From contig NC_088858.1 in NCBI RefSeq assembly GCF_963853765.1, positions 35,340,001-35,404,000 on the forward strand: a stretch of 64,000 bases of DNA, in the 5' to 3' direction. The translations under genes and the position numbers were made by a program. The notes below the pieces were generated by a model that made no database searches, had not been told where the DNA came from, and saw nothing but the letters and a program-made list of their open reading frames with translations. Positions 14,354-33,470 of this stretch are shown here, in pieces. Source of the DNA: Magallana gigas. Lineage: Eukaryota. Position 1 is the stretch's first letter. Each line of letters starts with the position of its first letter.

Positions 14354-15057
14354 CACAGCATATTGTTACACAATTTCGTCATGCAAACAAAATTTTGTTC
14401 CATGGAAGATATCGGGATGATGGCTTTATTATATTCAATGGCACCACAGAGGAAATAGAGGATTTTTTTCAAATTGGCAATCATTGTCACAAGCATCTTC
14501 AATTTACGTTTGAAGTCTCACCATCTTCTGTGAACTTTCTTGATACTACAGTTTACAAAGGCCCCAGATTTCAAACCTTTAACAAGCTTGACATCAAGTC
14601 ATTTATCAAACCTACAAACAACTTTCAATATCTACACAGACAGAGCGCTCATAGCCCATCTGTGTTTAAAGGTTTCATTAAAGGAGAATGCATTAGACAT
14701 GCACGAAATACTACCGACCCTACAATTTTGAATGCTACACTCAATGATTTTAAGGCGCATCTGTCAAAGCGGGGCTACTCTCCCCAAGAAATCGACCCAA
14801 TTATCAAAGAAACAACAAACACAAATCGAACAAAACTCATCCTCAATAAGACTCCAAAGCAAGCACTACGTAACCCTACGGTATTGGTTACTAAATTCAA
14901 TCCTTGCCTTAAAGGACTCAAAAAGCGAATTTTAAAGTATTGGGATATTGTACTTAGGAATTCTGAATGCAAATCTTCTTTTGATGCTCGACCTATTATA
15001 GCTTTCAGCAAGCACAAAAACATTAGCGACGAGATAATCAGGTCTCACTTAAAATAA
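14351..15057 (+). pseudogene. 5'-truncated PLE RT (C-terminal part)
   Basis: Starts at the inversion junction within ITQHIV. Includes GRYRDDGF and ends IIRSHLK*. Confidence 0.9.
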
Positions 15058-15075
15058 ACATCAGCTATTCTTGCA

Positions 15076-15197
15076 GACCCCTGATGAGGCTCATAACTGC
15101 CGAAACACTCTACAACTATTAGTACTTGCATATTTTAAATTGCAATTTGCTTTTTTGCAAAACATTACACTATCTTTGTGGTTTGGAGTGTCGGGTC
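15076..15197 (+). ncRNA. Type I hammerhead ribozyme with large stem III insertion
   Basis: Stem I GACCC (15076-80)/GGGTC (15193-97). Core CTGATGA (15081-87). Stem II GGC/GCC with 8-nt loop. GAAA (15102-05). Stem III ACACTC/GAGTGT. GUC cleavage triplet at 15190-92. Confidence 0.88.
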
Positions 15198-15495
15198 CTA
15201 ATAAATCCCTTACAAGTCTGGTTGATTGATGTCGCTAATTTTCACACTTTGACTAGGGACAATGTCCCACCGGCATCATCCCGTGCATCGCCCTCCCTTG
15301 GACAGCGATCGACTTGTGTGGTTTATTTGGTCTTCCAACATCTCCAACCACACCTGTTTCTATTGTCTTCTGAGACATTTTACTACCATCACTTCCTTTA
15401 CCAAATTAACTTGAATATGTAAAGGACTGGATTGCTACTTCAAAGTTGGTTTATTATACTTCTCTTATAAATCAAACACATTGGTTTATTCAAAT

Positions 15496-16263
15496 ATGCA
15501 CAACCCCAGCATCAGCCTTCATTCTGTTACTATGTACCAGCACTTTAACAAGCTCTCCCTCAAGAAATCCTCTACACAAATGTCAGAAGTTGACTACATG
15601 GACATCATGAAAGACCAAGTTCCTTCAAACCAAGAAGCAGCTATACAGGACTTGGACATGTCTATCAATCTACCAGATATTGATAGAGCATCGGCATTGA
15701 CAAAATCAAAAGTCTTGGAGTCTACTGAAGCCATTTTGTCTACCCGCCTACTTTACGCCAAACGTAAAGAGAGTATTTCTCATGGATTAAGGACGGGCCG
15801 CTTCCCATCGTGGTTCGGAAGCAAACTCCATTGTGAGTTAAACCTCCCTAGAGAGGATAACGACAACTTTGGCACTTTTCTCCTTGGATTACAAAAAGAA
15901 ACTACCTCGGCGTTCGGAAACTCTATCCTAAGCTACCTAGAGCGCTTGATCAGTGAAAAAGAAAGTGAAAGTAACAAATTAAGGGCAGAACATTTAAAAA
16001 GTCTGCAAGCTGAAACCGACGGCTATACCTTTGCCACTGAAAAAAGAAAGTTAGACGATGCCATCACAGCCATAACGGCCAAGCACACGACTGAACTACA
16101 AGAACATCGTCAAAAACTTCTCTCGTTATATAATCAACCGACAAGACCGGGCCACGCATCGTACACGTCCACAAACCACAAAAGCCATTCCAAACAACAA
16201 AGGAATGTGGGACATTACCGATACAGAGGACATAGCTATGTTCAGAGAAACAAACCATATTAA
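15496..16263 (+). CDS. PLE ORF1, ~255 aa, helical/coiled-coil with basic C-terminal tail (monomer 1)
   Basis: Open frame (ATG at 15496) repeated in every monomer. Charged helical central region and His/Arg-rich tail ending RNKPY. Function unknown. Confidence 0.7.
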   Translation: MHNPSISLHSVTMYQHFNKLSLKKSSTQMSEVDYMDIMKDQVPSNQEAAIQDLDMSINLPDIDRASALTKSKVLESTEAILSTRLLYAKRKESISHGLRTGRFPSWFGSKLHCELNLPREDNDNFGTFLLGLQKETTSAFGNSILSYLERLISEKESESNKLRAEHLKSLQAETDGYTFATEKRKLDDAITAITAKHTTELQEHRQKLLSLYNQPTRPGHASYTSTNHKSHSKQQRNVGHYRYRGHSYVQRNKPY

Positions 16264-16803
16264 CTTTCATATATTCTGTGCTATTTGTATAACGCCTGCT
16301 TGCACCATTAATAGTGCACCTATTGCTTTGGCACTAAGAGCCTAAGTATTAAACCATATCATTTGAGACCAAGTTTCTGTCTCATTGCTTCAATATAGTT
16401 CATGACTTTTGATTCACTTTTATGTTTTTGTTTTATCTTTTTCATCCACTTGCATTGTTAATCCACTCAGGATCAACAATTGAAACTAAGACGGGTTCTC
16501 ATTTTTACCTCTAATATTACGACATAGCGTATATTAGACGGTAGGTGCTTTATTAAGAACCAATTACTACAATTCATAACCCATTAAGCACACACTGGGT
16601 TTGACTAACGCGATCGCACACAGCAGCCTCCACGTGACCGCAATTAATCTATAAATTGGGCTATCAGTTCTCACTGCGTTACATTACCAGTATCCTCTAA
16701 TCTACCAACACACATTGGTAATTAGACGGATTCCTACCTAACCTACACAATAATTGTTGTTATTGTACACACGCAGCTCCTCTATTTAAATGGCTCGACG
16801 ACC

Positions 16804-18693
16804 GTGAAACGCACGTGTAATTATTTACGGGCTTATCAGGCTCACTGTAAAAAATCTACGGCCATAGGAGACAAGCTCGTGTTAAACCTATCACGACACA
16901 CGCTATCCAAAGACGAGCTCTGACTTCTGAGCAAAGGCTTAAAATTCATTCCTACGCCAAAAAATAACAACGCTAAGCGTTTACTTCTCAAAGACTTTGA
17001 CGAATTTGCAAGAAAACTCAGATGCAAATTCCACTTTGATACCGGGGACAACTCGCCGATTCACCCCTTTAAAACAAAGTCTGGGTTTATGCCGCCTTTG
17101 GCTTGCCGAGAACTCGAGGATTACATAGATAAAACAAAACTTGAACTTTCCTCAATGGAAATTGTAAACACGAGATCGAATATCTCTAAATCTGAGAGAG
17201 CGGCTATTTTATCGCTTAAAAATAACAACGACATCGTTATAAAAAAAGCAGATAAAAGTAATACCATTGTCATTATGAACAGAGATCAGTATGTCTCAGA
17301 AGCACATCGACAATTGTTATCCAAACACTATATGCAAGTACCTGAACCGAACATGCTCAAGCTGCATAATGATATTCAAAATATACTTTCGGAAATGCAT
17401 ATAAATGGGTCACTAGACAAAGAAACTTACAAGTTTCTGAATGACAATAAACCGTCATTAAAATGTGGTCATCTTTATCTTCTACCAAAAACCCACAAAA
17501 TTCCTGAACACATTTACAACGCTTTAATGAACGGTCATTGCAGCATCAGAAAATTACCACCTGGTAGACCAATTATCGCGCAATGCAACACGCCGACAAG
17601 GAAAATAGGACAGTACTGCGATCACTTTCTCGTCCTTATCGTACAAAAACAATCAACGTATATTAAAGATACTGCGGACTTTATCAACAAAATTGAAAGC
17701 CTCACGCCGCCACCTAACGCATTATTAATTACTTATGACGTGACAAGCATGTACACAAACATGGAATTCAATGAACTTCTTTCATCGGTGCACGAGGCTT
17801 ACACGCAGGCTAATAAAATTAAATCAGACATTCCTTATCCCACACCCAAGGAGCTAACGCTATTATTGAAATGCGTTTTAGAAAACAATTACTTTGAATT
17901 TGACGGAAAATTCTACAAGCAAATCATTGGAGCAAGCATGGGTGCAATTCCAAGTCCAGAAATTTGTGACATTCGAATGTATCAAATCACACAGCATATT
18001 GTTACACAATTTCGTCATGCAAACAAAATTTTGTTCCATGGAAGATATCGGGATGATGGCTTTATTATATTCAATGGCACCACAGAGGAAATAGAGGATT
18101 TTTTTCAAATTGGCAATCATTGTCACAAGCATCTTCAATTTACGTTTGAAGTCTCACCATCTTCTGTGAACTTTCTTGATACTACAGTTTACAAAGGCCC
18201 CAGATTTCAAACCTTTAACAAGCTTGACATCAAGTCATTTATCAAACCTACAAACAACTTTCAATATCTACACAGACAGAGCGCTCATAGCCCATCTGTG
18301 TTTAAAGGTTTCATTAAAGGAGAATGCATTAGACATGCACGAAATACTACCGACCCTACAATTTTGAATGCTACACTCAATGATTTTAAGGCGCATCTGT
18401 CAAAGCGGGGCTACTCTCCCCAAGAAATCGACCCAATTATCAAAGAAACAACAAACACAAATCGAACAAAACTCATCCTCAATAAGACTCCAAAGCAAGC
18501 ACTACGTAACCCTACGGTATTGGTTACTAAATTCAATCCTTGCCTTAAAGGACTCAAAAAGCGAATTTTAAAGTATTGGGATATTGTACTTAGGAATTCT
18601 GAATGCAAATCTTCTTTTGATGCTCGACCTATTATAGCTTTCAGCAAGCACAAAAACATTAGCGACGAGATAATCAGGTCTCACTTAAAATAA
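16804..18693 (+). pseudogene. PLE RT, monomer 1, with in-frame nonsense codon
   Basis: TGA at 16921-16923 where the other copies have TCA. Otherwise nearly identical to the intact copies. Confidence 0.88.
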
Positions 18694-18711
18694 ACATCAG
18701 CTATTCTTGCA

Positions 18712-18833
18712 GACCCCTGATGAGGCTCATAACTGCCGAAACACTCTACAACTATTAGTACTTGCATATTTTAAATTGCAATTTGCTTTTTTGCAAAACA
18801 TTACACTATCTTTGTGGTTTGGAGTGTCGGGTC
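18712..18833 (+). ncRNA. Type I hammerhead ribozyme
   Basis: Same motif as 15076-15197 (+3636). Confidence 0.88.
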
Positions 18834-19131
18834 CTAATAAATCCCTTACAAGTCTGGTTGATTGATGTCGCTAATTTTCACACTTTGACTAGGGACAATG
18901 TCCCACCGGCATCATCCCGTGCATCGCCCTCCCTTGGACAGCGATCGACTTGTGTGGTTTATTTGGTCTTCCAACATCTCCAACCACACCTGTTTCTATT
19001 GTCTTCTGAGACATTTTACTACCATCACTTCCTTTACCAAATTAACTTGAATATGTAAAGGACTGGATTGCTACTTCAAAGTTGGTTTATTATACTTCTC
19101 TTATAAATCAAACACATTGGTTTATTCAAAT

Positions 19132-19899
19132 ATGCACAACCCCAGCATCAGCCTTCATTCTGTTACTATGTACCAGCACTTTAACAAGCTCTCCCTCAAG
19201 AAATCCTCTACACAAAGGTCAGAAGTTGACTACATGGACATCATGAAAGACCAAGTTCCTTCAAACCAAGAAGCAGCTATACAGGACTTGGACATGTCTA
19301 TCAATCTACCAGATATTGATAGAGCATCGGCATTGACAAAATCAAAAGTCTTGGAGTCTACTGAAGCCATTTTGTCTACCCGCCTACTTTACGCCAAACG
19401 TAAAGAGAGTATTTCTCATGGATTAAGGACGGGCCGCTTCCCATCGTGGTTCGGAAGCAAACTCCATTGTGAGTTAAACCTCCCTAGAGAGGATAACGAC
19501 AACTTTGGCACTTTTCTCCTTGGATTACAAAAAGAAACTACCTCGGCGTTCGGAAACTCTATCCTAAGCTACCTAGAGCGCTTGATCAGTGAAAAAGAAA
19601 GTGAAAGTAACAAATTAAGGGCAGAACATTTAAAAAGTCTGCAAGCTGAAACCGACGGCTATACCTTTGCCACTGAAAAAAGAAAGTTAGACGATGCCAT
19701 CACAGCCATAACGGCCAAGCACACGACTGAACTACAAGAACATCGTCAAAAACTTCTCTCGTTATATAATCAACCGACAAGACCGGGCCACGCATCGTAC
19801 ACGTCCACAAACCACAAAAGCCATTCCAAACAACAAAGGAATGTGGGACATTACCGATACAGAGGACATAGCTATGTTCAGAGAAACAAACCATATTAA
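19132..19899 (+). CDS. PLE ORF1 (monomer 2)
   Basis: Copy of 15496-16263 with one M>R change (19217). Confidence 0.7.
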   Translation: MHNPSISLHSVTMYQHFNKLSLKKSSTQRSEVDYMDIMKDQVPSNQEAAIQDLDMSINLPDIDRASALTKSKVLESTEAILSTRLLYAKRKESISHGLRTGRFPSWFGSKLHCELNLPREDNDNFGTFLLGLQKETTSAFGNSILSYLERLISEKESESNKLRAEHLKSLQAETDGYTFATEKRKLDDAITAITAKHTTELQEHRQKLLSLYNQPTRPGHASYTSTNHKSHSKQQRNVGHYRYRGHSYVQRNKPY

Positions 19900-20439
19900 C
19901 TTTCATATATTCTGTGCTATTTGTATAACGCCTGCTTGCACCATTAATAGTGCACCTATTGCTTTGGCACTAAGAGCCTAAGTATTAAACCATATCATTT
20001 GAGACCAAGTTTCTGTCTCATTGCTTCAATATAGTTCATGACTTTTGATTCACTTTTATGTTTTTGTTTTATCTTTTTCATCCACTTGCATTGTTAATCC
20101 ACTCAGGATCAACAATTGAAACTAAGACGGGTTCTCATTTTTACCTCTAATATTACGACATAGCGTATATTAGACGGTAGGTGCTTTATTAAGAACCAAT
20201 TACTACAATTCATAACCCATTAAGCACACACTGGGTTTGACTAACGCGATCGCACACAGCAGCCTCCACGTGACCGCAATTAATCTATAAATTGGGCTAT
20301 CAGTTCTCACTGCGTTACATTACCAGTATCCTCTAATCTACCAACACACATTGGTAATTAGACGGATTCCTACCTAACCTACACAATAATTGTTGTTATT
20401 GTACACACGCAGCTCCTCTATTTAAATGGCTCGACGACC

Positions 20440-22329
20440 GTGAAACGCACGTGTAATTATTTACGGGCTTATCAGGCTCACTGTAAAAAATCTACGGCCA
20501 TAGGAGACAAGCTCGTGTTAAACCTATCACGACACACGCTATCCAAAGACGAGCTCTCACTTTTGAGCAAAGGCTTAAAATTCATTCCTACGCCAAAAAA
20601 TAACAACGCTAAGCGTTTACTTCTCAAAGACTTTGACGAATTTGCAAGAAAACTCAGATGCAAATTCCACTTTGATACCGGGGACAACTCGCCGATTCAC
20701 CCCTTTAAAACAAAGTCTGGGTTTATGCCGCCTTTGGCTTGCCGAGAACTCGAGGATTACATAGATAAAACAAAACTTGAACTTTCCTCAATGGAAATTG
20801 TAAACACGAGATCGAATATCTCTAAATCTGAGAGAGCGGCTATTTTATCGCTTAAAAATAACAACGACATCGTTATAAAAAAAGCAGATAAAAGTAATAC
20901 CATTGTCATTATGAACAGAGATCAGTATGTCTCAGAAGCACATCGACAATTGTTATCCAAACACTATATGCAAGTACCTGAACCGAACATGCTCAAGCTG
21001 CATAATGATATTCAAAATATACTTTCGGAAATGCATATAAATGGGTCACTAGACAAAGAAACTTACAAGTTTCTGAATGACAATAAACCGTCATTAAAAT
21101 GTGGTCATCTTTATCTTCTACCAAAAACCCACAAAATTCCTGAACACATTTACAACGCTTTAATGAACGGTCATTGCAGCATCAGAAAATTACCACCTGG
21201 TAGACCAATTATCGCGCAATGCAACACGCCGACAAGGAAAATAGGACAGTACTGCGATCACTTTCTCGTCCCTATCGTACAAAAACAATCAACGTATATT
21301 AAAGATACTGCGGACTTTATCAACAAAATTGAAAGCCTCACGCCGCCACCTAACGCATTATTAATTACTTATGACGTGACAAGCATGTACACAAACATGG
21401 AATTCAATGAACTTCTTTCATCGGTGCACGAGGCTTACACGCAGGCTAATAAAATTAAATCAGACATTCCTTATCCCACACCCAAGGAGCTAACGCTATT
21501 ATTGAAATGCGTTTTAGAAAACAATTACTTTGAATTTGACGGAAAATTCTACAAGCAAATCATTGGAGCAAGCATGGGTGCAATTCCAAGTCCAGAAATT
21601 TGTGACATTCGAATGTATCAAATCACACAGCATATTGTTACACAATTTCGTCATGCAAACAAAATTTTGTTCCATGGAAGATATCGGGATGATGGCTTTA
21701 TTATATTCAATGGCACCACAGAGGAAATAGAGGATTTTTTTCAAATTGGCAATCATTGTCACAAGCATCTTCAATTTACGTTTGAAGTCTCACCATCTTC
21801 TGTGAACTTTCTTGATACTACAGTTTACAAAGGCCCCAGATTTCAAACCTTTAACAAGCTTGACATCAAGTCATTTATCAAACCTACAAACAACTTTCAA
21901 TATCTACACAGACAGAGCGCTCATAGCCCATCTGTGTTTAAAGGTTTCATTAAAGGAGAATGCATTAGACATGCACGAAATACTACCGACCCTACAATTT
22001 TGAATGCTACACTCAATGATTTTAAGGCGCATCTGTCAAAGCGGGGCTACTCTCCCCAAGAAATCGACCCAATTATCAAAGAAACAACAAACACAAATCG
22101 AACAAAACTCATCCTCAATAAGACTCCAAAGCAAGCACTACGTAACCCTACGGTATTGGTTACTAAATTCAATCCTTGCCTTAAAGGACTCAAAAAGCGA
22201 ATTTTAAAGTATTGGGATATTGTACTTAGGAATTCTGAATGCAAATCTTCTTTTGATGCTCGACCTATTATAGCTTTCAGCAAGCACAAAAACATTAGCG
22301 ACGAGATAATCAGGTCTCACTTAAAATAA
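20440..22329 (+). CDS. PLE reverse transcriptase without GIY-YIG endonuclease (monomer 2, intact; true start uncertain)
   Basis: VLNLS..LS..E..LLSKGLKFIPTP, HLYLLPKTHK, PGRPII, YIKDT.DFI, TYDVTSMYTN, NYFEFDGKFYKQ..G.SMG, GRYRDDGF, VNFLD, KPTN..QYLH..S.H, KGE.IR. Ends PIIAFSKHKNISDEIIRSHLK*. Confidence 0.93.
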   Translation: MKRTCNYLRAYQAHCKKSTAIGDKLVLNLSRHTLSKDELSLLSKGLKFIPTPKNNNAKRLLLKDFDEFARKLRCKFHFDTGDNSPIHPFKTKSGFMPPLACRELEDYIDKTKLELSSMEIVNTRSNISKSERAAILSLKNNNDIVIKKADKSNTIVIMNRDQYVSEAHRQLLSKHYMQVPEPNMLKLHNDIQNILSEMHINGSLDKETYKFLNDNKPSLKCGHLYLLPKTHKIPEHIYNALMNGHCSIRKLPPGRPIIAQCNTPTRKIGQYCDHFLVPIVQKQSTYIKDTADFINKIESLTPPPNALLITYDVTSMYTNMEFNELLSSVHEAYTQANKIKSDIPYPTPKELTLLLKCVLENNYFEFDGKFYKQIIGASMGAIPSPEICDIRMYQITQHIVTQFRHANKILFHGRYRDDGFIIFNGTTEEIEDFFQIGNHCHKHLQFTFEVSPSSVNFLDTTVYKGPRFQTFNKLDIKSFIKPTNNFQYLHRQSAHSPSVFKGFIKGECIRHARNTTDPTILNATLNDFKAHLSKRGYSPQEIDPIIKETTNTNRTKLILNKTPKQALRNPTVLVTKFNPCLKGLKKRILKYWDIVLRNSECKSSFDARPIIAFSKHKNISDEIIRSHLK

Positions 22330-22347
22330 ACATCAGCTATTCTTGCA

Positions 22348-22469
22348 GACCCCTGATGAGGCTCATAACTGCCGAAACACTCTACAACTATTAGTACTTG
22401 CATATTTTAAATTGCAATTTGCTTTTTTGCAAAACATTACACTATCTTTGTGGTTTGGAGTGTCGGGTC
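22348..22469 (+). ncRNA. Type I hammerhead ribozyme
   Basis: Same motif as 15076-15197. Confidence 0.88.
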
Positions 22470-22767
22470 CTAATAAATCCCTTACAAGTCTGGTTGATTG
22501 ATGTCGCTAATTTTCACACTTTGACTAGGGACAATGTCCCACCGGCATCATCCCGTGCATCGCCCTCCCTTGGACAGCGATCGACTTGTGTGGTTTATTT
22601 GGTCTTCCAACATCTCCAACCACACCTGTTTCTATTGTCTTCTGAGACATTTTACTACCATCACTTCCTTTACCAAATTAACTTGAATATGTAAAGGACT
22701 GGATTGCTACTTCAAAGTTGGTTTATTATACTTCTCTTATAAATCAAACACATTGGTTTATTCAAAT

Positions 22768-23535
22768 ATGCACAACCCCAGCATCAGCCTTCATTCTGTT
22801 ACTATGTACCAGCACTTTAACAAGCTCTCCCTCAAGAAATCCTCTACACAAATGTCAGAAGTTGACTACATGGACATCATGAAAGACCAAGTTCCTTCAA
22901 ACCAAGAAGCAGCTATACAGGACTTGGACATGTCTATCAATCTACCAGATATTGATAGAGCATCGGCATTGACAAAATCAAAAGTCTTGGAGTCTACTGA
23001 AGCCATTTTGTCTACCCGCCTACTTTACGCCAAACGTAAAGAGAGTATTTCTCATGGATTAAGGACGGGCCGCTTCCCATCGTGGTTCGGAAGCAAACTC
23101 CATTGTGAGTTAAACCTCCCTAGAGAGGATAACGACAACTTTGGCACTTTTCTCCTTGGATTACAAAAAGAAACTACCTCGGCGTTCGGAAACTCTATCC
23201 TAAGCTACCTAGAGCGCTTGATCAGTGAAAAAGAAAGTGAAAGTAACAAATTAAGGGCAGAACATTTAAAAAGTCTGCAAGCTGAAACCGACGGCTATAC
23301 CTTTGCCACTGAAAAAAGAAAGTTAGACGATGCCATCACAGCCATAACGGCCAAGCACACGACTGAACTACAAGAACATCGTCAAAAACTTCTCTCGTTA
23401 TATAATCAACCGACAAGACCGGGCCACGCATCGTACACGTCCACAAACCACAAAAGCCATTCCAAACAACAAAGGAATGTGGGACATTACCGATACAGAG
23501 GACATAGCTATGTTCAGAGAAACAAACCATATTAA
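22768..23535 (+). CDS. PLE ORF1 (monomer 3)
   Basis: Same protein as monomer 1 ORF1. Confidence 0.7.
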   Translation: MHNPSISLHSVTMYQHFNKLSLKKSSTQMSEVDYMDIMKDQVPSNQEAAIQDLDMSINLPDIDRASALTKSKVLESTEAILSTRLLYAKRKESISHGLRTGRFPSWFGSKLHCELNLPREDNDNFGTFLLGLQKETTSAFGNSILSYLERLISEKESESNKLRAEHLKSLQAETDGYTFATEKRKLDDAITAITAKHTTELQEHRQKLLSLYNQPTRPGHASYTSTNHKSHSKQQRNVGHYRYRGHSYVQRNKPY

Positions 23536-24075
23536 CTTTCATATATTCTGTGCTATTTGTATAACGCCTGCTTGCACCATTAATAGTGCACCTATTGCTT
23601 TGGCACTAAGAGCCTAAGTATTAAACCATATCATTTGAGACCAAGTTTCTGTCTCATTGCTTCAATATAGTTCATGACTTTTGATTCACTTTTATGTTTT
23701 TGTTTTATCTTTTTCATCCACTTGCATTGTTAATCCACTCAGGATCAACAATTGAAACTAAGACGGGTTCTCATTTTTACCTCTAATATTACGACATAGC
23801 GTATATTAGACGGTAGGTGCTTTATTAAGAACCAATTACTACAATTCATAACCCATTAAGCACACACTGGGTTTGACTAACGCGATCGCACACAGCAGCC
23901 TCCACGTGACCGCAATTAATCTATAAATTGGGCTATCAGTTCTCACTGCGTTACATTACCAGTATCCTCTAATCTACCAACACACATTGGTAATTAGACG
24001 GATTCCTACCTAACCTACACAATAATTGTTGTTATTGTACACACGCAGCTCCTCTATTTAAATGGCTCGACGACC

Positions 24076-25920
24076 GTGAAACGCACGTGTAATTATTTAC
24101 GGGCTTATCAGGCTCACTGTAAAAAATCTACGGCCATAGGAGACAAGCTCGTGTTAAACCTATCACGACACACGCTATCCAAAGACGAGCTCTCACTTTT
24201 GAGCAAAGGCTTAAAATTCATTCCTACGCCAAAAAATAACAACGCTAAGCGTTTACTTCTCAAAGACTTTGACGAATTTGCAAGAAAACTCAGATGCAAA
24301 TTCCACTTTGATACCGGGGACAACTCGCCGATTCACCCCTTTAAAACAAAGTCTGGGTTTATGCCGCCTTTGGCTTGCCGAGAACTCGAGGATTACATAG
24401 ATAAAACAAAACTTGAACTTTCCTCAATGGAAATTGTAAACACGAGATCGAATATCTCTAAATCTGAGAGAGCGGCTATTTTATCGCTTAAAAATAACAA
24501 CGACATCGTTATAAAAAAAGCAGATAAAAGTAATACCATTGTCATTATGAACAGAGATCAGTATGTCTCAGAAGCACATCGACAATTGTTATCCAAACAC
24601 TATATGCAAGTACCTGAACCGAACATGCTCAAGCTGCATAATGATATTCAAAATATACTTTCGGAAATGCATATAAATGGGTCACTAGACAAAGAAACTT
24701 ACAAGTTTCTGAATGACAATAAACCGTCATTAAAATGTGGTCATCTTTATCTTCTACCAAAAACCCACAAAATTCCTGAACACATTTACAACGCTTTAAT
24801 GAACGGTCATTGCAGCATCAGAAAATTACCACCTGGTAGACCAATTATCGCGCAATGCAACACGCCGACAAGGAAAATAGGACAGTACTGCGATCACTTT
24901 CTCGTCCCTATCGTACAAAAACAATCAACGTATATTAAAGATACTGCGGACTTTATCAACAAAATTGAAAGCCTCACGCCGCCACCTAACGCATTATTAA
25001 TTACTTATGACGTGACAAGCATGTACACAAACATGGAATTCAATGAACTTCTTTCATCGGTGCACGAGGCTTACACGCAGGCTAATAAAATTAAATCAGA
25101 CATTCCTTATCCCACACCCAAGGAGCTAACGCTATTATTGAAATGCGTTTTAGAAAACAATTACTTTGAATTTGACGGAAAATTCTACAAGCAAATCATT
25201 GGAGCAAGCATGGGTGCAATTCCAAGTCCAGAAATTTGTGACATTCGAATGTATCAAATCACACAGCATATTGTTACACAATTTCGTCATGCAAACAAAA
25301 TTTTGTTCCATGGAAGATATCGGGATGATGGCTTTATTATATTCAATGGCACCACAGAGGAAATAGAGGATTTTTTTCAAATTGGCAATCATTGTCACAA
25401 GCATCTTCAATTTACGTTTGAAGTCTCACCATCTTCTGTGAACTTTCTTGATACTACAGTTTACAAAGGCCCCAGATTTCAAACCTTTAACAAGCTTGAC
25501 ATCAAGTCATTTATCAAACCTACAAACAACTTTCAATATCTACACAGACAGAGCGCTCATAGCCCATCTGTGTTTAAAGGTTTCATTAAAGGAGAATGCA
25601 TTAGACATGCACGAAATACTACCGACCCTACAATTTTGAATGCTACACTCAATGATTTTAAGGCGCATCTGTCAAAGCGGGGCTACTCTCCCCAAGAAAT
25701 CGACCCAATTATCAAAGAAACAACAAACACAAATCGAACAAAACTCATCCTCAATAAGACTCCAAAGCAAGCACTACGTAACCCTACGGTATTGGTTACT
25801 AAATTCAATCCTTGCCTTAAAGGACTCAAAAAGCGAATTTTAAAGTATTGGGATATTGTACTTAGGAATTCTGAATGCAAATCTTCTTTTGATGCTCGAC
25901 CTATTATAGCTTTCAGCTAA
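24076..25920 (+). CDS. PLE RT (monomer 3), last 15 aa lost by deletion
   Basis: Ends PIIAFS* at a junction that deletes ~364 bp, including the hammerhead, with filler TAACATTT (25918-25925). Confidence 0.88.
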   Translation: MKRTCNYLRAYQAHCKKSTAIGDKLVLNLSRHTLSKDELSLLSKGLKFIPTPKNNNAKRLLLKDFDEFARKLRCKFHFDTGDNSPIHPFKTKSGFMPPLACRELEDYIDKTKLELSSMEIVNTRSNISKSERAAILSLKNNNDIVIKKADKSNTIVIMNRDQYVSEAHRQLLSKHYMQVPEPNMLKLHNDIQNILSEMHINGSLDKETYKFLNDNKPSLKCGHLYLLPKTHKIPEHIYNALMNGHCSIRKLPPGRPIIAQCNTPTRKIGQYCDHFLVPIVQKQSTYIKDTADFINKIESLTPPPNALLITYDVTSMYTNMEFNELLSSVHEAYTQANKIKSDIPYPTPKELTLLLKCVLENNYFEFDGKFYKQIIGASMGAIPSPEICDIRMYQITQHIVTQFRHANKILFHGRYRDDGFIIFNGTTEEIEDFFQIGNHCHKHLQFTFEVSPSSVNFLDTTVYKGPRFQTFNKLDIKSFIKPTNNFQYLHRQSAHSPSVFKGFIKGECIRHARNTTDPTILNATLNDFKAHLSKRGYSPQEIDPIIKETTNTNRTKLILNKTPKQALRNPTVLVTKFNPCLKGLKKRILKYWDIVLRNSECKSSFDARPIIAFS

Positions 25921-26047
25921 CATTTGACATTTTACTACCATCACTTCCTTTACCAAATTAACTTGAATATGTAAAGGACTGGATTGCTACTTCAAAGTTG
26001 GTTTATTATACTTCTCTTATAAATCAAACACATTGGTTTATTCAAAT

Positions 26048-26731
26048 ATGCACAACCCCAGCATCAGCCTTCATTCTGTTACTATGTACCAGCACTTTAA
26101 CAAGCTCTCCCTCAAGAAATCCTCTACACAAATGTCAGAAGTTGACTACATGGACATCATGAAAGACCAAGTTCCTTCAAACCAAGAAGCAGCTATACAG
26201 GACTTGGACATGTCTATCAATCTACCAGATATTGATAGAGCATCGGCATTGACAAAATCAAAAGTCTTGGAGTCTACTGAAGCCATTTTGTCTACCCGCC
26301 TACTTTACGCCAAACGTGGAGAGGATAACGACAACTTTGGCACTTTTCTCCTTGGATTACAAAAAGAAACTACCTCGGCGTTCGGAAACTCTATCCTAAG
26401 CTACCTAGAGCGCTTGATCAGTGAAAAAGAAAGTGAAAGTAACAAATTAAGGGCAGAACATTTAAAAAGTCTGCAAGCTGAAACCGACGGCTATACCTTT
26501 GCCACTGAAAAAAGAAAGTTAGACGATGCCATCACAGCCATAACGGCCAAGCACACGACTGAACTACAAGAACATCGTCAAAAACTTCTCTCGTTATATA
26601 ATCAACCGACAAGACCGGGCCACGCATCGTACACGTCCACAAACCACAAAAGCCATTCCAAACAACAAAGGAATGTGGGACATTACCGATACAGAGGACA
26701 TAGCTATGTTCAGAGAAACAAACCATATTAA
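26048..26731 (+). CDS. PLE ORF1 (monomer 4) with net 84-bp in-frame deletion
   Basis: YAKR-G-EDND junction at ~26317; 28 aa shorter than the other copies. Confidence 0.65.
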   Translation: MHNPSISLHSVTMYQHFNKLSLKKSSTQMSEVDYMDIMKDQVPSNQEAAIQDLDMSINLPDIDRASALTKSKVLESTEAILSTRLLYAKRGEDNDNFGTFLLGLQKETTSAFGNSILSYLERLISEKESESNKLRAEHLKSLQAETDGYTFATEKRKLDDAITAITAKHTTELQEHRQKLLSLYNQPTRPGHASYTSTNHKSHSKQQRNVGHYRYRGHSYVQRNKPY

Positions 26732-27271
26732 CTTTCATATATTCTGTGCTATTTGTATAACGCCTGCTTGCACCATTAATAGTGCACCTATTGCTTTGGC
26801 ACTAAGAGCCTAAGTATTAAACCATATCATTTGAGACCAAGTTTCTGTCTCATTGCTTCAATATAGTTCATGACTTTTGATTCACTTTTATGTTTTTGTT
26901 TTATCTTTTTCATCCACTTGCATTGTTAATCCACTCAGGATCAACAATTGAAACTAAGACGGGTTCTCATTTTTACCTCTAATATTACGACATAGCGTAT
27001 ATTAGACGGTAGGTGCTTTATTAAGAACCAATTACTACAATTCATAACCCATTAAGCACACACTGGGTTTGACTAACGCGATCGCACACAGCAGCCTCCA
27101 CGTGACCGCAATTAATCTATAAATTGGGCTATCAGTTCTCACTGCGTTACATTACCAGTATCCTCTAATCTACCAACACACATTGGTAATTAGACGGATT
27201 CCTACCTAACCTACACAATAATTGTTGTTATTGTACACACGCAGCTCCTCTATTTAAATGGCTCGACGACC

Positions 27272-29161
27272 GTGAAACGCACGTGTAATTATTTACGGGC
27301 TTATCAGGCTCACTGTAAAAAATCTACGGCCATAGGAGACAAGCTCGTGTTAAACCTATCACGACACACGCTATCCAAAGACGAGCTCTCACTTTTGAGC
27401 AAAGGCTTAAAATTCATTCCTACGCCAAAAAATAACAACGCTAAGCGTTTACTTCTCAAAGACTTTGACGAATTTGCAAGAAAACTCAGATGCAAATTCC
27501 ACTTTGATACCGGGGACAACTCGCCGATTCACCCCTTTAAAACAAAGTCTGGGTTTATGCCGCCTTTGGCTTGCCGAGAACTCGAGGATTACATAGATAA
27601 AACAAAACTTGAACTTTCCTCAATGGAAATTGTAAACACGAGATCGAATATCTCTAAATCTGAGAGAGCGGCTATTTTATCGCTTAAAAATAACAACGAC
27701 ATCGTTATAAAAAAAGCAGATAAAAGTAATACCATTGTCATTATGAACAGAGATCAGTATGTCTCAGAAGCACATCGACAATTGTTATCCAAACACTATA
27801 TGCAAGTACCTGAACCGAACATGCTCAAGCTGCATAATGATATTCAAAATATACTTTCGGAAATGCATATAAATGGGTCACTAGACAAAGAAACTTACAA
27901 GTTTCTGAATGACAATAAACCGTCATTAAAATGTGGTCATCTTTATCTTCTACCAAAAACCCACAAAATTCCTGAACACATTTACAACGCTTTAATGAAC
28001 GGTCATTGCAGCATCAGAAAATTACCACCTGGTAGACCAATTATCGCGCAATGCAACACGCCGACAAGGAAAATAGGACAGTACTGCGATCACTTTCTCG
28101 TCCCTATCGTACAAAAACAATCAACGTATATTAAAGATACTGCGGACTTTATCAACAAAATTGAAAGCCTCACGCCGCCACCTAACGCATTATTAATTAC
28201 TTATGACGTGACAAGCATGTACACAAACATGGAATTCAATGAACTTCTTTCATCGGTGCACGAGGCTTACACGCAGGCTAATAAAATTAAATCAGACATT
28301 CCTTATCCCACACCCAAGGAGCTAACGCTATTATTGAAATGCGTTTTAGAAAACAATTACTTTGAATTTGACGGAAAATTCTACAAGCAAATCATTGGAG
28401 CAAGCATGGGTGCAATTCCAAGTCCAGAAATTTGTGACATTCGAATGTATCAAATCACACAGCATATTGTTACACAATTTCGTCATGCAAACAAAATTTT
28501 GTTCCATGGAAGATATCGGGATGATGGCTTTATTATATTCAATGGCACCACAGAGGAAATAGAGGATTTTTTTCAAATTGGCAATCATTGTCACAAGCAT
28601 CTTCAATTTACGTTTGAAGTCTCACCATCTTCTGTGAACTTTCTTGATACTACAGTTTACAAAGGCCCCAGATTTCAAACCTTTAACAAGCTTGACATCA
28701 AGTCATTTATCAAACCTACAAACAACTTTCAATATCTACACAGACAGAGCGCTCATAGCCCATCTGTGTTTAAAGGTTTCATTAAAGGAGAATGCATTAG
28801 ACATGCACGAAATACTACCGACCCTACAATTTTGAATGCTACACTCAATGATTTTAAGGCGCATCTGTCAAAGCGGGGCTACTCTCCCCAAGAAATCGAC
28901 CCAATTATCAAAGAAACAACAAACACAAATCGAACAAAACTCATCCTCAATAAGACTCCAAAGCAAGCACTACGTAACCCTACGGTATTGGTTACTAAAT
29001 TCAATCCTTGCCTTAAAGGACTCAAAAAGCGAATTTTAAAGTATTGGGATATTGTACTTAGGAATTCTGAATGCAAATCTTCTTTTGATGCTCGACCTAT
29101 TATAGCTTTCAGCAAGCACAAAAACATTAGCGACGAGATAATCAGGTCTCACTTAAAATAA
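27272..29161 (+). CDS. PLE RT without endonuclease (monomer 4, intact)
   Basis: Same protein as 20440-22329. Confidence 0.93.
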   Translation: MKRTCNYLRAYQAHCKKSTAIGDKLVLNLSRHTLSKDELSLLSKGLKFIPTPKNNNAKRLLLKDFDEFARKLRCKFHFDTGDNSPIHPFKTKSGFMPPLACRELEDYIDKTKLELSSMEIVNTRSNISKSERAAILSLKNNNDIVIKKADKSNTIVIMNRDQYVSEAHRQLLSKHYMQVPEPNMLKLHNDIQNILSEMHINGSLDKETYKFLNDNKPSLKCGHLYLLPKTHKIPEHIYNALMNGHCSIRKLPPGRPIIAQCNTPTRKIGQYCDHFLVPIVQKQSTYIKDTADFINKIESLTPPPNALLITYDVTSMYTNMEFNELLSSVHEAYTQANKIKSDIPYPTPKELTLLLKCVLENNYFEFDGKFYKQIIGASMGAIPSPEICDIRMYQITQHIVTQFRHANKILFHGRYRDDGFIIFNGTTEEIEDFFQIGNHCHKHLQFTFEVSPSSVNFLDTTVYKGPRFQTFNKLDIKSFIKPTNNFQYLHRQSAHSPSVFKGFIKGECIRHARNTTDPTILNATLNDFKAHLSKRGYSPQEIDPIIKETTNTNRTKLILNKTPKQALRNPTVLVTKFNPCLKGLKKRILKYWDIVLRNSECKSSFDARPIIAFSKHKNISDEIIRSHLK

Positions 29162-29179
29162 ACATCAGCTATTCTTGCA

Positions 29180-29301
29180 GACCCCTGATGAGGCTCATAA
29201 CTGCCGAAACACTCTACAACTATTAGTACTTGCATATTTTAAATTGCAATTTGCTTTTTTGCAAAACATTACACTATCTTTGTGGTTTGGAGTGTCGGGT
29301 C
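29180..29301 (+). ncRNA. Type I hammerhead ribozyme
   Basis: Same motif as 15076-15197. Confidence 0.88.
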
Positions 29302-29599
29302 CTAATAAATCCCTTACAAGTCTGGTTGATTGATGTCGCTAATTTTCACACTTTGACTAGGGACAATGTCCCACCGGCATCATCCCGTGCATCGCCCTCC
29401 CTTGGACAGCGATCGACTTGTGTGGTTTATTTGGTCTTCCAACATCTCCAACCACACCTGTTTCTATTGTCTTCTGAGACATTTTACTACCATCATTTCC
29501 TTTACCAAATTAACTTGAATATGTAAAGGACTGGATTGCTACTTCAAAGTTGGTTTATTATACTTCTCTTATAAATCAAACACATTGGTTTATTCAAAT

Positions 29600-30367
29600 A
29601 TGCACAACCCCAGCATCAGCCTTCATTCTGTTACTATGTACCAGCACTTTAACAAGCTCTCCCTCAAGAAATCCTCTACACAAATGTCAGAAGTTGACTA
29701 CATGGACATCATGAAAGACCAAGTTCCTTCAAACCAAGAAGCAGCTATACAGGACTTGGACATGTCTATCAATCTACCAGATATTGATAGAGCATCGGCA
29801 TTGACAAAATCAAAAGTCTTGGAGTCTACTGAAGCCATTTTGTCTACCCGCCTACTTTACGCCAAACGTAAAGAGAGTATTTCTCATGGATTAAGGACGG
29901 GCCGCTTCCCATCGTGGTTCGGAAGCAAACTCCATTGTGAGTTAAACCTCCCTAGAGAGGATAACGACAACTTTGGCACTTTTCTCCTTGGATTACAAAA
30001 AGAAACTACCTCGGCGTTCGGAAACTCTATCCTAAGCTACCTAGAGCGCTTGATCAGTGAAAAAGAAAGTGAAAGTAACAAATTAAGGGCAGAACATTTA
30101 AAAAGTCTGCAAGCTGAAACCGACGGCTATACCTTTGCCACTGAAAAAAGAAAGTTAGACGATGCCATCACAGCCATAACGGCCAAGCACACGACTGAAC
30201 TACAAGAACATCGTCAAAAACTTCTCTCGTTATATAATCAACCGACAAGACCGGGCCACGCATCGTACACGTCCACAAACCACAAAAGCCATTCCAAACA
30301 ACAAAGGAATGTGGGACATTACCGATACAGAGGACATAGCTATGTTCAGAGAAACAAACCATATTAA
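29600..30367 (+). CDS. PLE ORF1 (monomer 5)
   Basis: Same protein as monomer 1 ORF1. Confidence 0.7.
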   Translation: MHNPSISLHSVTMYQHFNKLSLKKSSTQMSEVDYMDIMKDQVPSNQEAAIQDLDMSINLPDIDRASALTKSKVLESTEAILSTRLLYAKRKESISHGLRTGRFPSWFGSKLHCELNLPREDNDNFGTFLLGLQKETTSAFGNSILSYLERLISEKESESNKLRAEHLKSLQAETDGYTFATEKRKLDDAITAITAKHTTELQEHRQKLLSLYNQPTRPGHASYTSTNHKSHSKQQRNVGHYRYRGHSYVQRNKPY

Positions 30368-30907
30368 CTTTCATATATTCTGTGCTATTTGTATAACGCC
30401 TGCTTGCACCATTAATAGTGCACCTATTGCTTTGGCACTAAGAGCCTAAGTATTAAACCATATCATTTGAGACCAAGTTTCTGTCTCATTGCTTCAATAT
30501 AGTTCATGACTTTTGATTCACTTTTATGTTTTTGTTTTATCTTTTTCATCCACTTGCATTGTTAATCCACTCAGGATCAACAATTGAAACTAAGACGGGT
30601 TCTCATTTTTACCTCTAATATTACGACATAGCGTATATTAGACGGTAGGTGCTTTATTAAGAACCAATTACTACAATTCATAACCCATTAAGCACACACT
30701 GGGTTTGACTAACGCGATCGCACACAGCAGCCTCCACGTGACCGCAATTAATCTATAAATTGGGCTATCAGTTCTCACTGCGTTACATTACCAGTATCCT
30801 CTAATCTACCAACACACATTGGTAATTAGACGGATTCCTACCTAACCTACACAATAATTGTTGTTATTGTACACACGCAGCTCCTCTATTTAAATGGCTC
30901 GACGACC

Positions 30908-32797: not shown

Positions 32798-32815
32798 ACA
32801 TCAGCTATTCTTGCA

Positions 32816-32937
32816 GACCCCTGATGAGGCTCATAACTGCCGAAACACTCTACAACTATTAGTACTTGCATATTTTAAATTGCAATTTGCTTTTTTGCAA
32901 AACATTACACTATCTTTGTGGTTTGGAGTGTCGGGTC
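32816..32937 (+). ncRNA. Type I hammerhead ribozyme (terminal copy)
   Basis: Same motif as 15076-15197; predicted cleavage after 32932. Confidence 0.88.
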
Positions 32938-33470
32938 CTAATAAATCCCTTACAAGTCTGGTTGATTGATGTCGCTAATTTTCACACTTCAACGTTGAAT
33001 CAACGTTGAATAATGGTTGAACAACGTTGTAACTTGATTTCAACCTTTCCTCAACGTTGAAACAACGTTGCGTGCCCACTGGGTTATAGGTCCCCATCTT
33101 TATATCCAAGTGATTTTCGGATGAATGACATTACTATTACTGTGGTTTCATTAATATTCAAGGGTATCAATTTTCGTGGATATAGGGAAAATCATAGTTT
33201 CGAGGATACGAAAATTCGTGGCCAGTGACCCTATCAATACAAAATGTTAATAGAAATTGCACTTTAATGAACATTTAATTTCGTTGATCAACTTAACAAC
33301 GAAATCCACGAAAATTAGTATTCAATGAATATTGATGAAACCACAGTATTTAAGGTGCCTACCTCCTTGAACTAGATGGTATCACGCTGCGTGGAAATTA
33401 ACACTTTCAACATTACTATGATTTATACAACGCTCAATATGATGGACACTATTTTTTGTTCACTTTTAGT

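What the first reader, a model, noticed from the sequence alone, without database searches (positions are those of the whole stretch)
15193..15247. Fixed 3' end 55 nt beyond the ribozyme cut: circular or multimeric RNA template
Seen: three independent termini (12519, 12912, 32987) end within 1-2 nt of ...GCTAATTTTCACAC, 55 nt downstream of the predicted GUC cleavage site. Cleavage at consecutive hammerheads would release an exact 3636-nt monomer. In a linear cleaved monomer those 55 nt would be the 5' end, so cDNA starting there could not continue into RT. Inference: the template is a ligated circle or an uncleaved read-through RNA. Rolling-circle reverse transcription would directly give five head-to-tail monomers plus a partial one. 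Known parallel: hammerhead-bearing retrozymes make circular RNAs.
Basis: partly seen in the sequence, partly recalled or inferred. Interest (0 to 1): 0.78.

Follow-up and report, generated by a model that had tools for sequence, protein, structure and literature searches.

The report
Fixed "tail" end of oyster Penelope-like retroelement
The 55 bases are the known "tail" of a Penelope-like jumping gene: its enzyme always starts DNA copying 55 bases past the RNA's self-cutting site, a known trait well preserved in this oyster genome; an RNA circle as template stays untested.

Summary
In the window, three element ends stop at unit nt 54-57, which is 55 nt after the hammerhead (HHR) GUC. At least 15 further loci on other chromosomes stop at the same place, as does a 72-82%-identical sister family.

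This is the published "tail" signature of Penelope-like elements (PLEs). Frangieh et al. 2024 explain it by reverse transcription starting at a fixed internal site of unprocessed RNA. The circular-RNA, more-than-unit template idea was already proposed for PLE tandems by Cervera & de la Peña 2014. So this is a new member of a known kind.

- Eight junctions at six loci restart at exactly nt 1 after a tail. They read as run-off on HHR-cleaved RNA followed by re-entry at nt ~55.
- The start site lies in an A/C-rich internal loop of a conserved stem-loop.
- Every array derives from one unit sequence. The window's five units share a private 28-nt deletion.

The template must be continuous across the cut. 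Earlier notes of this scan on other copies in this genome report RNA reads ending at the predicted cut; I did not test that.

The parts
15193..15247 (+). The 'tail' segment (unit nt 1-55), from the base after the HHR scissile bond to the cDNA start site. It carries HHR stem I 3' strand GGGUC (15193-15197), AAUAAA (15200-15205) and the A/C-rich start site CACAC (15243-15247).
15076..15197 (+). Type I hammerhead. Stem I is 15076-15080 with 15193-15197. CUGAUGA is 15081-15087. Stem II is 15088-15090 with 15099-15101. GAAA is 15102-15105. Stem III is 15105-15111 with 15185-15191, with a ~73-nt insert between the strands. C17 is 15192, and the cut lies between 15192 and 15193.
   Evidence: The MFE fold is the three-way junction. 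The core is conserved in 7 diverged families. Helices are 95.5% paired in register against 22-41% when slid. Rfam gives only 19.4 bits against a gathering score of 52.
15227..15278 (+). Conserved stem-loop round the start site. The basal 8-bp stem is 15227-15234 with 15271-15278. The apical hairpin is 15256-15260 with 15264-15268. The start site lies in the 5' internal loop. I read this as the probable RT entry element; that is inference.
   Evidence: There is one compensatory G:C to A:U pair, two half-compensatory changes and no broken pair in 6 families. This region is the best-conserved non-coding part.
12518..12913 (-). Fragment A: unit 3295-3636 plus tail nt 1-54. Its 3' end at 12518 abuts the left flank.
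12911..14353 (-). Fragment B: unit 2250-3636 plus tail nt 1-55/56. The tail is joined to the 5' end of A by a 3-nt overlap. The 5' end of B is joined head-to-head to the plus-strand array at 14351-14353.
14351..15192 (+). 5'-truncated first unit of the array (unit 2795-3636), the pseudo-LTR.
15193..25917 (+). Units 1-3 of the array: 15193-18828, 18829-22464, and 22465-25917 (unit nt 1-3453).
25918..25925 (+). 8-nt filler at a junction where unit 3454-3636 plus nt 1-181 are deleted, so one hammerhead and one tail segment are missing.
25926..32932 (+). Units 4-5. Unit 4 is 25926-29296 and also lacks unit nt 574-658. Unit 5 is 29297-32932.
32933..32989 (+). Terminal tail of the array (unit nt 1-55). 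Two further bases also match the flank.

Best explanation
The array is an endonuclease-less, two-ORF Penelope-like element (PLE) of a bivalve, and the 55 nt are its 'tail'. The tail is the stretch between two fixed points of the element's RNA.

- Point 1 is the hammerhead scissile bond (15192|15193). Cleavage there makes the 5' end of processed RNA.
- Point 2 is an internal cDNA start site in an A/C-rich loop (CACAC, nt 51-55) of a conserved stem-loop (nt 35-86). The element's RT most likely binds this stem-loop.

From a free DNA 3' end the RT starts at nt ~55 and copies towards the RNA 5' end.

- If the hammerhead 55 nt ahead is uncut, or has been religated, synthesis runs on into the RT gene. 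It gives the usual 5'-truncated copies, pseudo-LTR copies and multi-unit arrays.
- If the hammerhead is cut, the RT runs off at nt 1, adds 0-3 untemplated bases and often re-enters another RNA at nt ~55. This leaves bare 55-nt tails.

Both sides of one break can be extended, which gives the tail-out inverted architecture.

Shown:
- fixed 3' ends genome-wide;
- 5' ends exactly at the predicted cut;
- re-entry at nt ~55;
- one template sequence per complex.

Inferred:
- the stem-loop is the RT entry element;
- the tail-to-nt-1 junctions are single-event template switches;
- multi-unit arrays form at insertion.

I commit to a template continuous across the cut. The topology is left open, with the odds given under the rival explanations.
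For: Fixed ends:
- In the window and at 15 or more other loci the element ends at unit nt 54-58, next to unrelated flanks.
- The sister family u2 ends at nt 49 or 55-57.
- Two more families (loci L054, L055) lose similarity at the aligned position.

Run-off at the cut:
- The junction 'tail + 1 nt + nt 1' occurs at C9:9283283, C3:55539786 and C3:40095383.
- A pattern search that did not fix the junction position found six tail-to-tail junctions, and every one restarts at GGGTC. Three of them lie in a row at C10:24.87 Mb.
- The extra bases are A, C, AA(A), G or none, so they do not look like a cap-derived G.
- C9:9.27 Mb holds an exact monomer, nt 1-3664 plus tail.

Re-entry at nt ~55:
- Tails are joined directly to 5'-truncated copies in the window (B to A) and at C4:54.18 Mb and C7:14.28 Mb.
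- At C3:55.53 Mb four pieces from two families are chained.

Stem-loop.

Literature:
- The PLE tail is described in PMC8557442.
- Internal RT initiation in an AC-rich stem-loop downstream of the HHR cut, on unprocessed RNA, with both strands extended, is shown in PMC11167929.
Against: - No RNA data could be obtained.
- Support for the stem-loop is modest. There is one independent compensatory change, and z-scores are about -2.
- Serial precise insertions next to older tails could mimic template switching.
- PLE membership of the RT rests on architecture and motifs. It was not tested by a tree with named PLE references.
- Rfam does not call the hammerhead at its gathering score.
Confidence: 0.8

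Rival explanations
1. Rolling-circle reverse transcription. A unit-length RNA is released by two hammerhead cuts and ligated into a circle by a host RtcB-type ligase. The RT enters at nt ~55 and goes round several times, giving n units plus a tail.
For: - Every array descends from one unit sequence. In the window all differences between units are singletons.
- All 5 window units share a 28-nt deletion found nowhere else in the assembly.
- In the sister family, the 11 differences between the C3 and C7 arrays are each fixed in all units of an array.
- All 11 or so internal junctions are exact, whereas most of the 8 run-off junctions (5-6) carry extra bases.
- Terminal tails lack the 3' half of the entry stem-loop. 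With linear templates an array should therefore lose a unit per generation. A circle restores a complete entry site to any single unit, and the tail completes the last hammerhead.
- Bivalves ligate HHR-cut RNAs efficiently. Mussel retrozyme circRNAs reach up to 1% of total RNA (PMC7229834).
- The model was proposed for PLEs in PMC4209133.
Against: - No RNA evidence was obtained here.
- In Anolis, HHR-dead mutants insert equally well in vitro, and no reads begin or end at the cut.
- A parent copy carrying the 28-nt deletion is also missing under this model.
- Naiad PLEs form tandems without canonical hammerheads.
Confidence: 0.33
2. Linear read-through multimer. A long transcript of a pre-existing tandem array, uncut at several hammerheads, is copied from an internal entry site.
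For: - This is the published model for Poseidon of Anolis.
- Cleavage looks inefficient. There are 20 exact crossings of the cut against a handful of run-offs.
- The 5' ends of four arrays or long copies cluster at unit 2771-2846. That could mark a transcription start in the pseudo-LTR. This reading is post hoc.
Against: - No other multi-unit array of this family exists in the assembly. The only other internal unit junction, at C9:34.44 Mb, is 1-1.5% diverged.
- A parent array would need the 28-nt deletion in every unit.
- Arrays should shrink each generation, yet daughter arrays are homogeneous and have as many units as their putative parents.
Confidence: 0.3
3. Growth after insertion. A partial tandem (pseudo-LTR plus one unit plus tail) was inserted, the 28-nt deletion arose in place, and unequal sister-chromatid exchange then expanded that unit to five.
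For: - The deletion is private to this locus, and this model needs no missing parent.
- The 842-nt pseudo-LTR gives the homology needed for a first unequal exchange.
- This is the standard model for satellite growth.
Against: - None of the 5 SNPs or 2 deletions is shared by two units. All units therefore existed before any variant arose.
- Arrays recur at four independent loci in two families. Three of them have near-equal lengths of 8.1-8.8 kb.
- Inverted and extra fragments at each locus match that locus's units.
Confidence: 0.2
4. End-to-end template jumping. The RT runs off nt 1 of a cleaved monomer and jumps to the 3' end (nt 3636) of another, stitching monomers into an array.
For: - Run-off at nt 1 followed by continued synthesis on another RNA is documented here.
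- From my own knowledge, R2-type RTs are known to jump between template ends.
Against: - Every observed jump from nt 1 lands at the internal site nt ~55, never at nt 3636, and most carry extra bases.
- Array junctions are all exact.
Confidence: 0.1
5. The tail is made by the element's endonuclease when it resolves the insertion, or by nested insertion into its own tail. This is the older suggestion for PLEs.
For: Craig et al. 2021 attributed tails to endonuclease-mediated resolution. The Penelope endonuclease recognises the tail region.
Against: - This family encodes no GIY-YIG domain in any frame, yet it has constant tails.
- Flanks share no motif.
Confidence: 0.04
6. Assembly artefact: the array of near-identical units is a mis-assembly.
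For: Units are 99.9-100% identical. PLE structures are known to trouble assemblies.
Against: - Units carry distinct singletons and one carries unique deletions.
- The same architecture recurs at other loci.
- The fixed end does not depend on unit number.
Confidence: 0.03

Closest known systems
PLE 'tail' and internal initiation of reverse transcription (Poseidon of Anolis carolinensis, Frangieh et al. 2024, PMC11167929; tail described in Craig et al. 2021, PMC8557442)
   Same: - The 3' ends are fixed and lie inside the repeating unit, a few tens of nt downstream of the hammerhead cut.
- The start lies in an A/C-rich part of a stem-loop and has no homology to the target.
- The template crosses an uncut hammerhead.
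- Both sides of a break are extended, giving inverted 5'-truncated partners.
   Different: - This family has no GIY-YIG endonuclease, so the tail cannot be a product of endonuclease action.
- The tail is constitutive and 55 nt long measured from the cut. It is not an optional 30-40 bp between two start sites.
- Run-off products that begin exactly at the cut are preserved in this genome. In Anolis no reads began or ended at the cut.
Circular-RNA, more-than-unit template model for PLE tandems (Cervera & de la Peña 2014, PMC4209133)
   Different: That paper dealt with minimal, dimer-dependent metazoan PLE hammerheads of low activity. This element has a complete monomeric three-helix hammerhead with a long helix III. 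The model remains untested in both cases.
Metazoan non-LTR retrozymes (Cervera & de la Peña 2020, PMC7229834; Li et al. 2026 preprint 10.64898/2026.07.22.740005)
   Same: - Tandem units each carry a type I hammerhead, and they occur in bivalves.
- They are thought to derive from PLE pseudo-LTRs and to move by rolling-circle copying of circRNA.
   Different: - Retrozymes are 170-400 nt, non-coding and non-autonomous, and their circRNAs have been demonstrated.
- This unit is 3.6 kb and coding (two ORFs), and no circle has been shown.
Endonuclease-deficient PLEs (Athena, Coprina; EN- offshoots such as Neptune-like MjPLE01)
   Same: - The RT has no endonuclease.
- A hammerhead lies next to the 3' end region.
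- Priming must come from free DNA 3' ends.
   Different: - Athena and Coprina sit at telomeres and carry reverse-complement telomeric repeats beside the hammerhead.
- This family is chromosome-internal. The window has no telomeric repeats, and the family has an ORF1.
R2 5' processing by an HDV-like ribozyme (my own knowledge; cited in PMC4209133)
   Same: A self-cleaving ribozyme defines the 5' end of the element RNA, and full-length cDNAs end there.
   Different: In R2 the ribozyme lies only at the 5' end of a co-transcript. Here the same ribozyme also lies just upstream of the cDNA start site, so cleavage there aborts copying.

Membership tests
Penelope-like elements (PLE) | RT of the PLE/TERT-related clade with N-terminal motifs including the DKG-type motif | tested here: inconclusive
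   There is a weak RVT_1 hit, E = 7e-6. An ADKS motif is visible in the translation. The 643-646-aa homologues in oysters, pearl oysters, mussels and scallops share the DUF8422 + RVT_1 + HTH_animal architecture. No tree with named PLE references could be built.
Penelope-like elements (PLE) | Partial tandems (pseudo-LTRs), frequent 5' truncation and adjacent inverted 5'-truncated copies | tested here: met
Penelope-like elements (PLE) | Hammerhead motif within the pseudo-LTR | tested here: met
Penelope-like elements (PLE) | Short 'tail' extension at the end of the insertion | tested here: met
   The element ends at unit nt 54-58 at 15 or more loci. The sister family does the same.
Canonical EN+ PLE (Penelope/Poseidon, Neptune, Nematis, Naiad) | GIY-YIG endonuclease domain, C- or N-terminal | tested here: not met
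   No GIY-YIG hit in ORF1, in ORF2 or in longer homologues. The unit has no other ORF of 100 aa or more.
EN- PLE of the Athena/Coprina type | Telomeric location with reverse-complement telomeric repeats beside the hammerhead | tested here: not met
   The window lies 35.3 Mb into contig C6. It has no (TTAGGG)n, and the flanks of other copies are unrelated.
Hammerhead ribozyme, type I | Conserved core CUGAUGA...GAAA...UH and three helices, with helix I open | tested here: met
   sequence, MFE fold, conservation and in-register pairing
Hammerhead ribozyme, type I | Rfam gathering score | tested here: not met
   The best match is Hammerhead_HH9, 19.4 bits against a gathering score of 52. The ~73-nt helix III insert is outside the models.
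Hammerhead ribozyme, type I | Self-cleavage at the predicted bond | tested here: inconclusive
   The support is indirect. Eight genomic junctions at six loci begin exactly at the base after C17, and one monomer starts there. No RNA or biochemical test was possible.
Retrozymes (circRNA-forming HHR retroelements) | Small, non-coding, non-autonomous unit | tested here: not met
   The unit is 3636-3664 nt with two ORFs.
Retrozymes (circRNA-forming HHR retroelements) | Accumulation of unit-length circular RNA | not testable with these tools
Junction reads could not separate a circle from a tandem transcript in any case.

The most novel reading that the evidence does not exclude
A full-length, protein-coding 3.6-kb PLE RNA is cut out by its own hammerheads, ligated into a circle, and copied by rolling-circle reverse transcription from a structured entry site placed just 3' of the cut. 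The ribozyme plus the tail would then be what makes a single unit self-sufficient, and what regenerates multi-unit arrays at every transposition. The RT, a sister of telomerase, would also perform telomerase-like repeated copying of the 55-nt leader on cleaved RNAs.
Probability: 0.3. Interest if true: 0.8.

Novelty: new member of a known kind. Interest (0 to 1): 0.5.

Why it matters
How PLEs build their tandem and inverted structures, and what their conserved hammerheads are for, are open questions in the PLE literature (PMC8557442, PMC11167929).

This young oyster family gives an unusually clean genomic record:
- constant cDNA start sites without any endonuclease;
- run-off products that map ribozyme cleavage in vivo to the base;
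- chained re-entries at one RNA site;
- arrays that each trace back to a single unit.

Together these sharpen the question into a testable one. If the entry site needs sequence beyond nt 55, arrays copied from linear RNA must shrink each generation. A unit-multiplying step must then exist, either an RNA circle or DNA-level expansion.

For genome annotation, the result also explains short 55-nt tail repeats and complex palindromic PLE scars in bivalve assemblies.

Tried and rejected
- Rfam at gathering threshold found nothing in the window. A permissive scan gave only a weak HH9 match.
- The first look-up of encoding contigs failed. The repeat gave one 3.5-kb contig of an 82%-identical relative. 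It runs straight through hammerhead and tail and says nothing about topology.
- The covariance-model search of the genome found more instances. Weaker hits such as C9:28.18 Mb and C1:63.29 Mb were not examined.
- A tail-to-nt-1 pattern for the sister family with an exact tail sequence found nothing. A looser pattern did.
- A PDB sequence search gave no meaningful hit.
- Target-site duplications: an 8-bp TTCAACGT flanks the window complex, but it lies inside a local TCAACGTTGAA repeat. Other loci show no duplication. I therefore did not use it as evidence.
- Hammerhead covariation: the helices are conserved rather than covarying, so no covariation claim is made.

Full report
**What is there**

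Window 12518-32989 holds one complex insertion of a retroelement. I counted its unit from the base after the hammerhead GUC (window 15193); the unit is 3636 nt. BLAST of one unit against the window and the repeat scan give this layout.

- Fragment A, minus strand, 12518-12913: unit 3295-3636 plus nt 1-54.
- Fragment B, minus strand, 12911-14353: unit 2250-3636 plus nt 1-55/56.
- B is joined head-to-head, by a 3-nt overlap at 14351-14353, to a plus-strand array.
- The array starts 5'-truncated at unit 2795 and runs through five units. It ends with nt 1-55(57) at 32987-32989.
- One unit junction is deleted: unit 3454-3636 plus nt 1-181 are replaced by 8 nt at 25918-25925. The same unit also lacks nt 574-658.

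They all read ...GCTAATTTTCACA(C).

**The element**

Each unit has an ORF1 of about 260 aa and an RT ORF.
- No GIY-YIG endonuclease is encoded in any frame.
- The RT has 491 homologues at E <= 0.001. The named ones come from oysters, pearl oysters, mussels and scallops, and most are 640-650 aa.
- The RT carries an ADKS version of the PLE DKG motif (motif described in PMC8557442).

Four features match the structural definition of Penelope-like elements (PMC8557442): the hammerhead, the pseudo-LTR partial tandems, the inverted 5'-truncated partners and the tail. The element belongs to the endonuclease-less sort but is not telomeric. EN- offshoots inside chromosomes are known. I could not place the RT on a tree with named references.

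**The hammerhead**

The sequence has the full CUGAUGA / GAAA / GUC core, and the minimum-free-energy fold is the three-way junction. Stem I is 5 bp and open, stem II is 3 bp, and stem III is long with a ~73-nt insert.

The core and the helix bases are conserved in seven families of this genome whose helix III inserts are unalignable. The helices are 95.5% paired in register, against 22-41% when slid. Rfam does not reach its gathering score.

**The fixed 3' end is genome-wide**

An 800-nt probe centred on the terminus found at least 15 further loci where similarity stops at unit nt 54-58. They lie on contigs C1, C2, C3, C4, C5, C9 and C10, next to unrelated flanks.

A sister family (u2; 3625-nt unit, 72-82% identical) ends at nt 49 or 55-57 after its own hammerhead at five loci. 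Two more families lose similarity at the aligned position.

The start-site bases vary but stay A/C-rich: CACAC, AAACA, AAAAC, ACAAT.

**This is the known PLE tail**

Craig et al. 2021 describe a 30-40-bp tail at the ends of PLE insertions.

Frangieh et al. 2024 worked with purified Poseidon protein from Anolis. They showed that:
- reverse transcription starts at internal sites in an AC-rich stem-loop downstream of the hammerhead cut;
- the start site has no homology to the target;
- both DNA strands are extended;
- hammerhead-dead mutants insert equally well;

The geometry here is the same. Because this family has no endonuclease, the tail cannot be a product of endonuclease resolution. That favours the internal-initiation explanation.

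**New: scars of ribozyme cleavage**

Three loci of the window's family carry the junction 'tail end + one base + unit nt 1'. They are C9:9283283 (extra C), C3:55539786 (extra A) and C3:40095383 (extra A).

I then ran a pattern that required only two copies of a 14-mer inside the tail, 30-55 nt apart, so it did not fix where the junction lies. It returned six junctions at four loci in at least three families. Every one restarts exactly at GGGTC, the base after C17, with 0-3 extra bases. At C10:24.87 Mb at least four bare tails stand in tandem.

C9:9.27 Mb holds an exact monomer, nt 1 through the whole unit plus a 55-nt tail. It is preceded by a 183-nt fragment plus tail.

The simplest reading has three steps.
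1. RNAs cleaved at the predicted bond exist in vivo.
2. cDNA begun at nt ~55 runs off their 5' end.
3. The RT then re-enters another RNA at the same internal site.

The variable extra bases argue against a capped transcription start. Two earlier notes of this scan (s1-388627, s1-388582) report RNA reads ending at the predicted cut in sister copies. I could not test that.

**Re-entry at nt ~55**

Tails are also joined directly to 5'-truncated copies. This is seen in the window (B to A), at C4:54.18 Mb and at C7:14.28 Mb.

At C3:55.53 Mb four pieces from two different families are chained, each beginning at its own nt ~55. This marks nt ~55 as an RNA-defined entry site.

**A conserved stem-loop holds the start site**

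Unit nt 1-125 is the best-conserved non-coding part between families.

RNAalifold and single-sequence folds agree on the structure:
- an 8-bp basal stem, window 15227-15234 with 15271-15278;
- an apical hairpin, 15256-15260 with 15264-15268;
- the start site in the 5' internal loop.

There is one compensatory pair, two half-compensatory changes and no broken pair. Single-sequence z-scores are about -2, so support is modest.

Terminal tails stop inside this structure and lack its 3' half. If the RT needs the whole structure, the entry site at the end of an insertion is dead. The Anolis 3'-truncation data suggest by analogy that it does. An array copied from linear RNA would then lose at least one unit per generation.

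**Every array comes from one unit sequence**

- In the window, the differences between units are five singleton SNPs and the deletions in one unit. None is shared, and fragments A and B match the units.
- All five units share a 28-nt deletion at unit nt 1609. It occurs nowhere else in the assembly, while six other loci have the intact allele.
- In the sister family, the arrays on C3 and C7 differ by 11 substitutions per unit. Each substitution is fixed in all units and side fragments of its array, and units within an array differ by 0-3.

So a step that multiplies a single unit is required.

**What that step is remains open**

The candidates are:
- rolling-circle copying of a ligated monomer;
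- read-through of a homogeneous parent array;
- in-situ unequal crossover;
- end-to-end template jumping.

*For the circle:*
- Array junctions are exact, whereas most run-off junctions carry extra bases.
- The shrinkage argument above applies.
- The tail completes the last hammerhead.
- HHR-cut RNAs are ligated efficiently in mussels (PMC7229834).

*Against the circle:*
- No RNA data were obtained.
- In Anolis the hammerhead is dispensable in vitro.
- Hammerhead-less Naiads also form tandems.

*For in-situ growth:* the private deletion fits it as well as it fits a circle.

*Against in-situ growth:*
- No variant is shared between units.
- Arrays recur at four loci.
- Three sister-family arrays have similar lengths of 8.1-8.8 kb.

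The circle model itself was published in 2014 for PLEs (PMC4209133).

**Limits**

**Verdict**

The circle is unproven. The phenomenon is a well-preserved new example of a known PLE signature, with some new and testable detail.

Noticed in passing
window 16801 (unit nt 1609) and the same place in each of the five units: All five array units lack 28 nt that intact copies carry at C9:9.27 Mb, C4:54.18 Mb, C9:34.44 Mb, C1:27.28 Mb and C10:8.07 Mb. In intact copies an ATG opens a 643-aa RT ORF. In the window the ATG frame stops after 5 codons (MARRP*) and overlaps a GTG. This explains the other note that the RT frame has no AUG for 121 codons. The array is probably a translation-impaired variant moved in trans.
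   Followed up: yes
window 16922, 16927 and 17636 (unit nt 1730, 1735, 2444 of unit 1): Unit 1 has three private substitutions. Its open RT frame is shorter, 589 against 655 codons stop-to-stop, so this copy carries an extra stop.
   Followed up: partly
window 25918-25925 and 26318: Unit 3/4 has two deletions with short filler or microhomology. The first removes 364 nt across the junction, including a hammerhead. The second removes 85 nt at unit 574-658. They look like template-switch or repair scars.
   Followed up: partly
window 15200-15205 (unit nt 8-13): An AATAAA lies directly after the ribozyme cut. It is kept as AATAAA, AATAAT or AGTAAA in sister families. The terminal tail would give the last unit a polyadenylation signal, and polyadenylated mRNA would end upstream of the cDNA start site.
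   Followed up: no
window 12440-12517 and 32988-33080; also 11441-11502: Both flanks of the complex lie in a local palindromic TCAACGTTGAA repeat. An 8-bp TTCAACGT occurs on both sides. It could be a target duplication or just the repeat. Other loci show no duplication.
   Followed up: partly
G000 C10:24869744-24869986: At least four bare 55-nt tails of a sister family stand in tandem. Each starts at the hammerhead cut. This makes a short satellite that looks like repeated run-off and re-entry.
   Followed up: partly
G000 C1:34.32 Mb, C3:21.45 Mb, C7:14.28 Mb (L035-L037, L044-L046): There are three independent arrays of the sister family. Each has two full units plus a 5' partial unit and a tail, and total lengths are 8.1-8.8 kb. 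The 5' ends of arrays and long copies cluster at unit 2749-2917. This may mark a transcription start in the pseudo-LTR or an RT stop.
   Followed up: partly
L045:1152-1290 (C1:34.32 Mb array): One hammerhead of this otherwise identical array has GUAUC instead of GUGUC, which gives an A-C mismatch at pair 15.2-16.2.
   Followed up: no
window 42914-44624 and 56341-57078: Other tandem repeats occur in the window: 343 bp x 5 at 97% identity, and 134-bp and 164-bp units. They are unrelated to the element.
   Followed up: no
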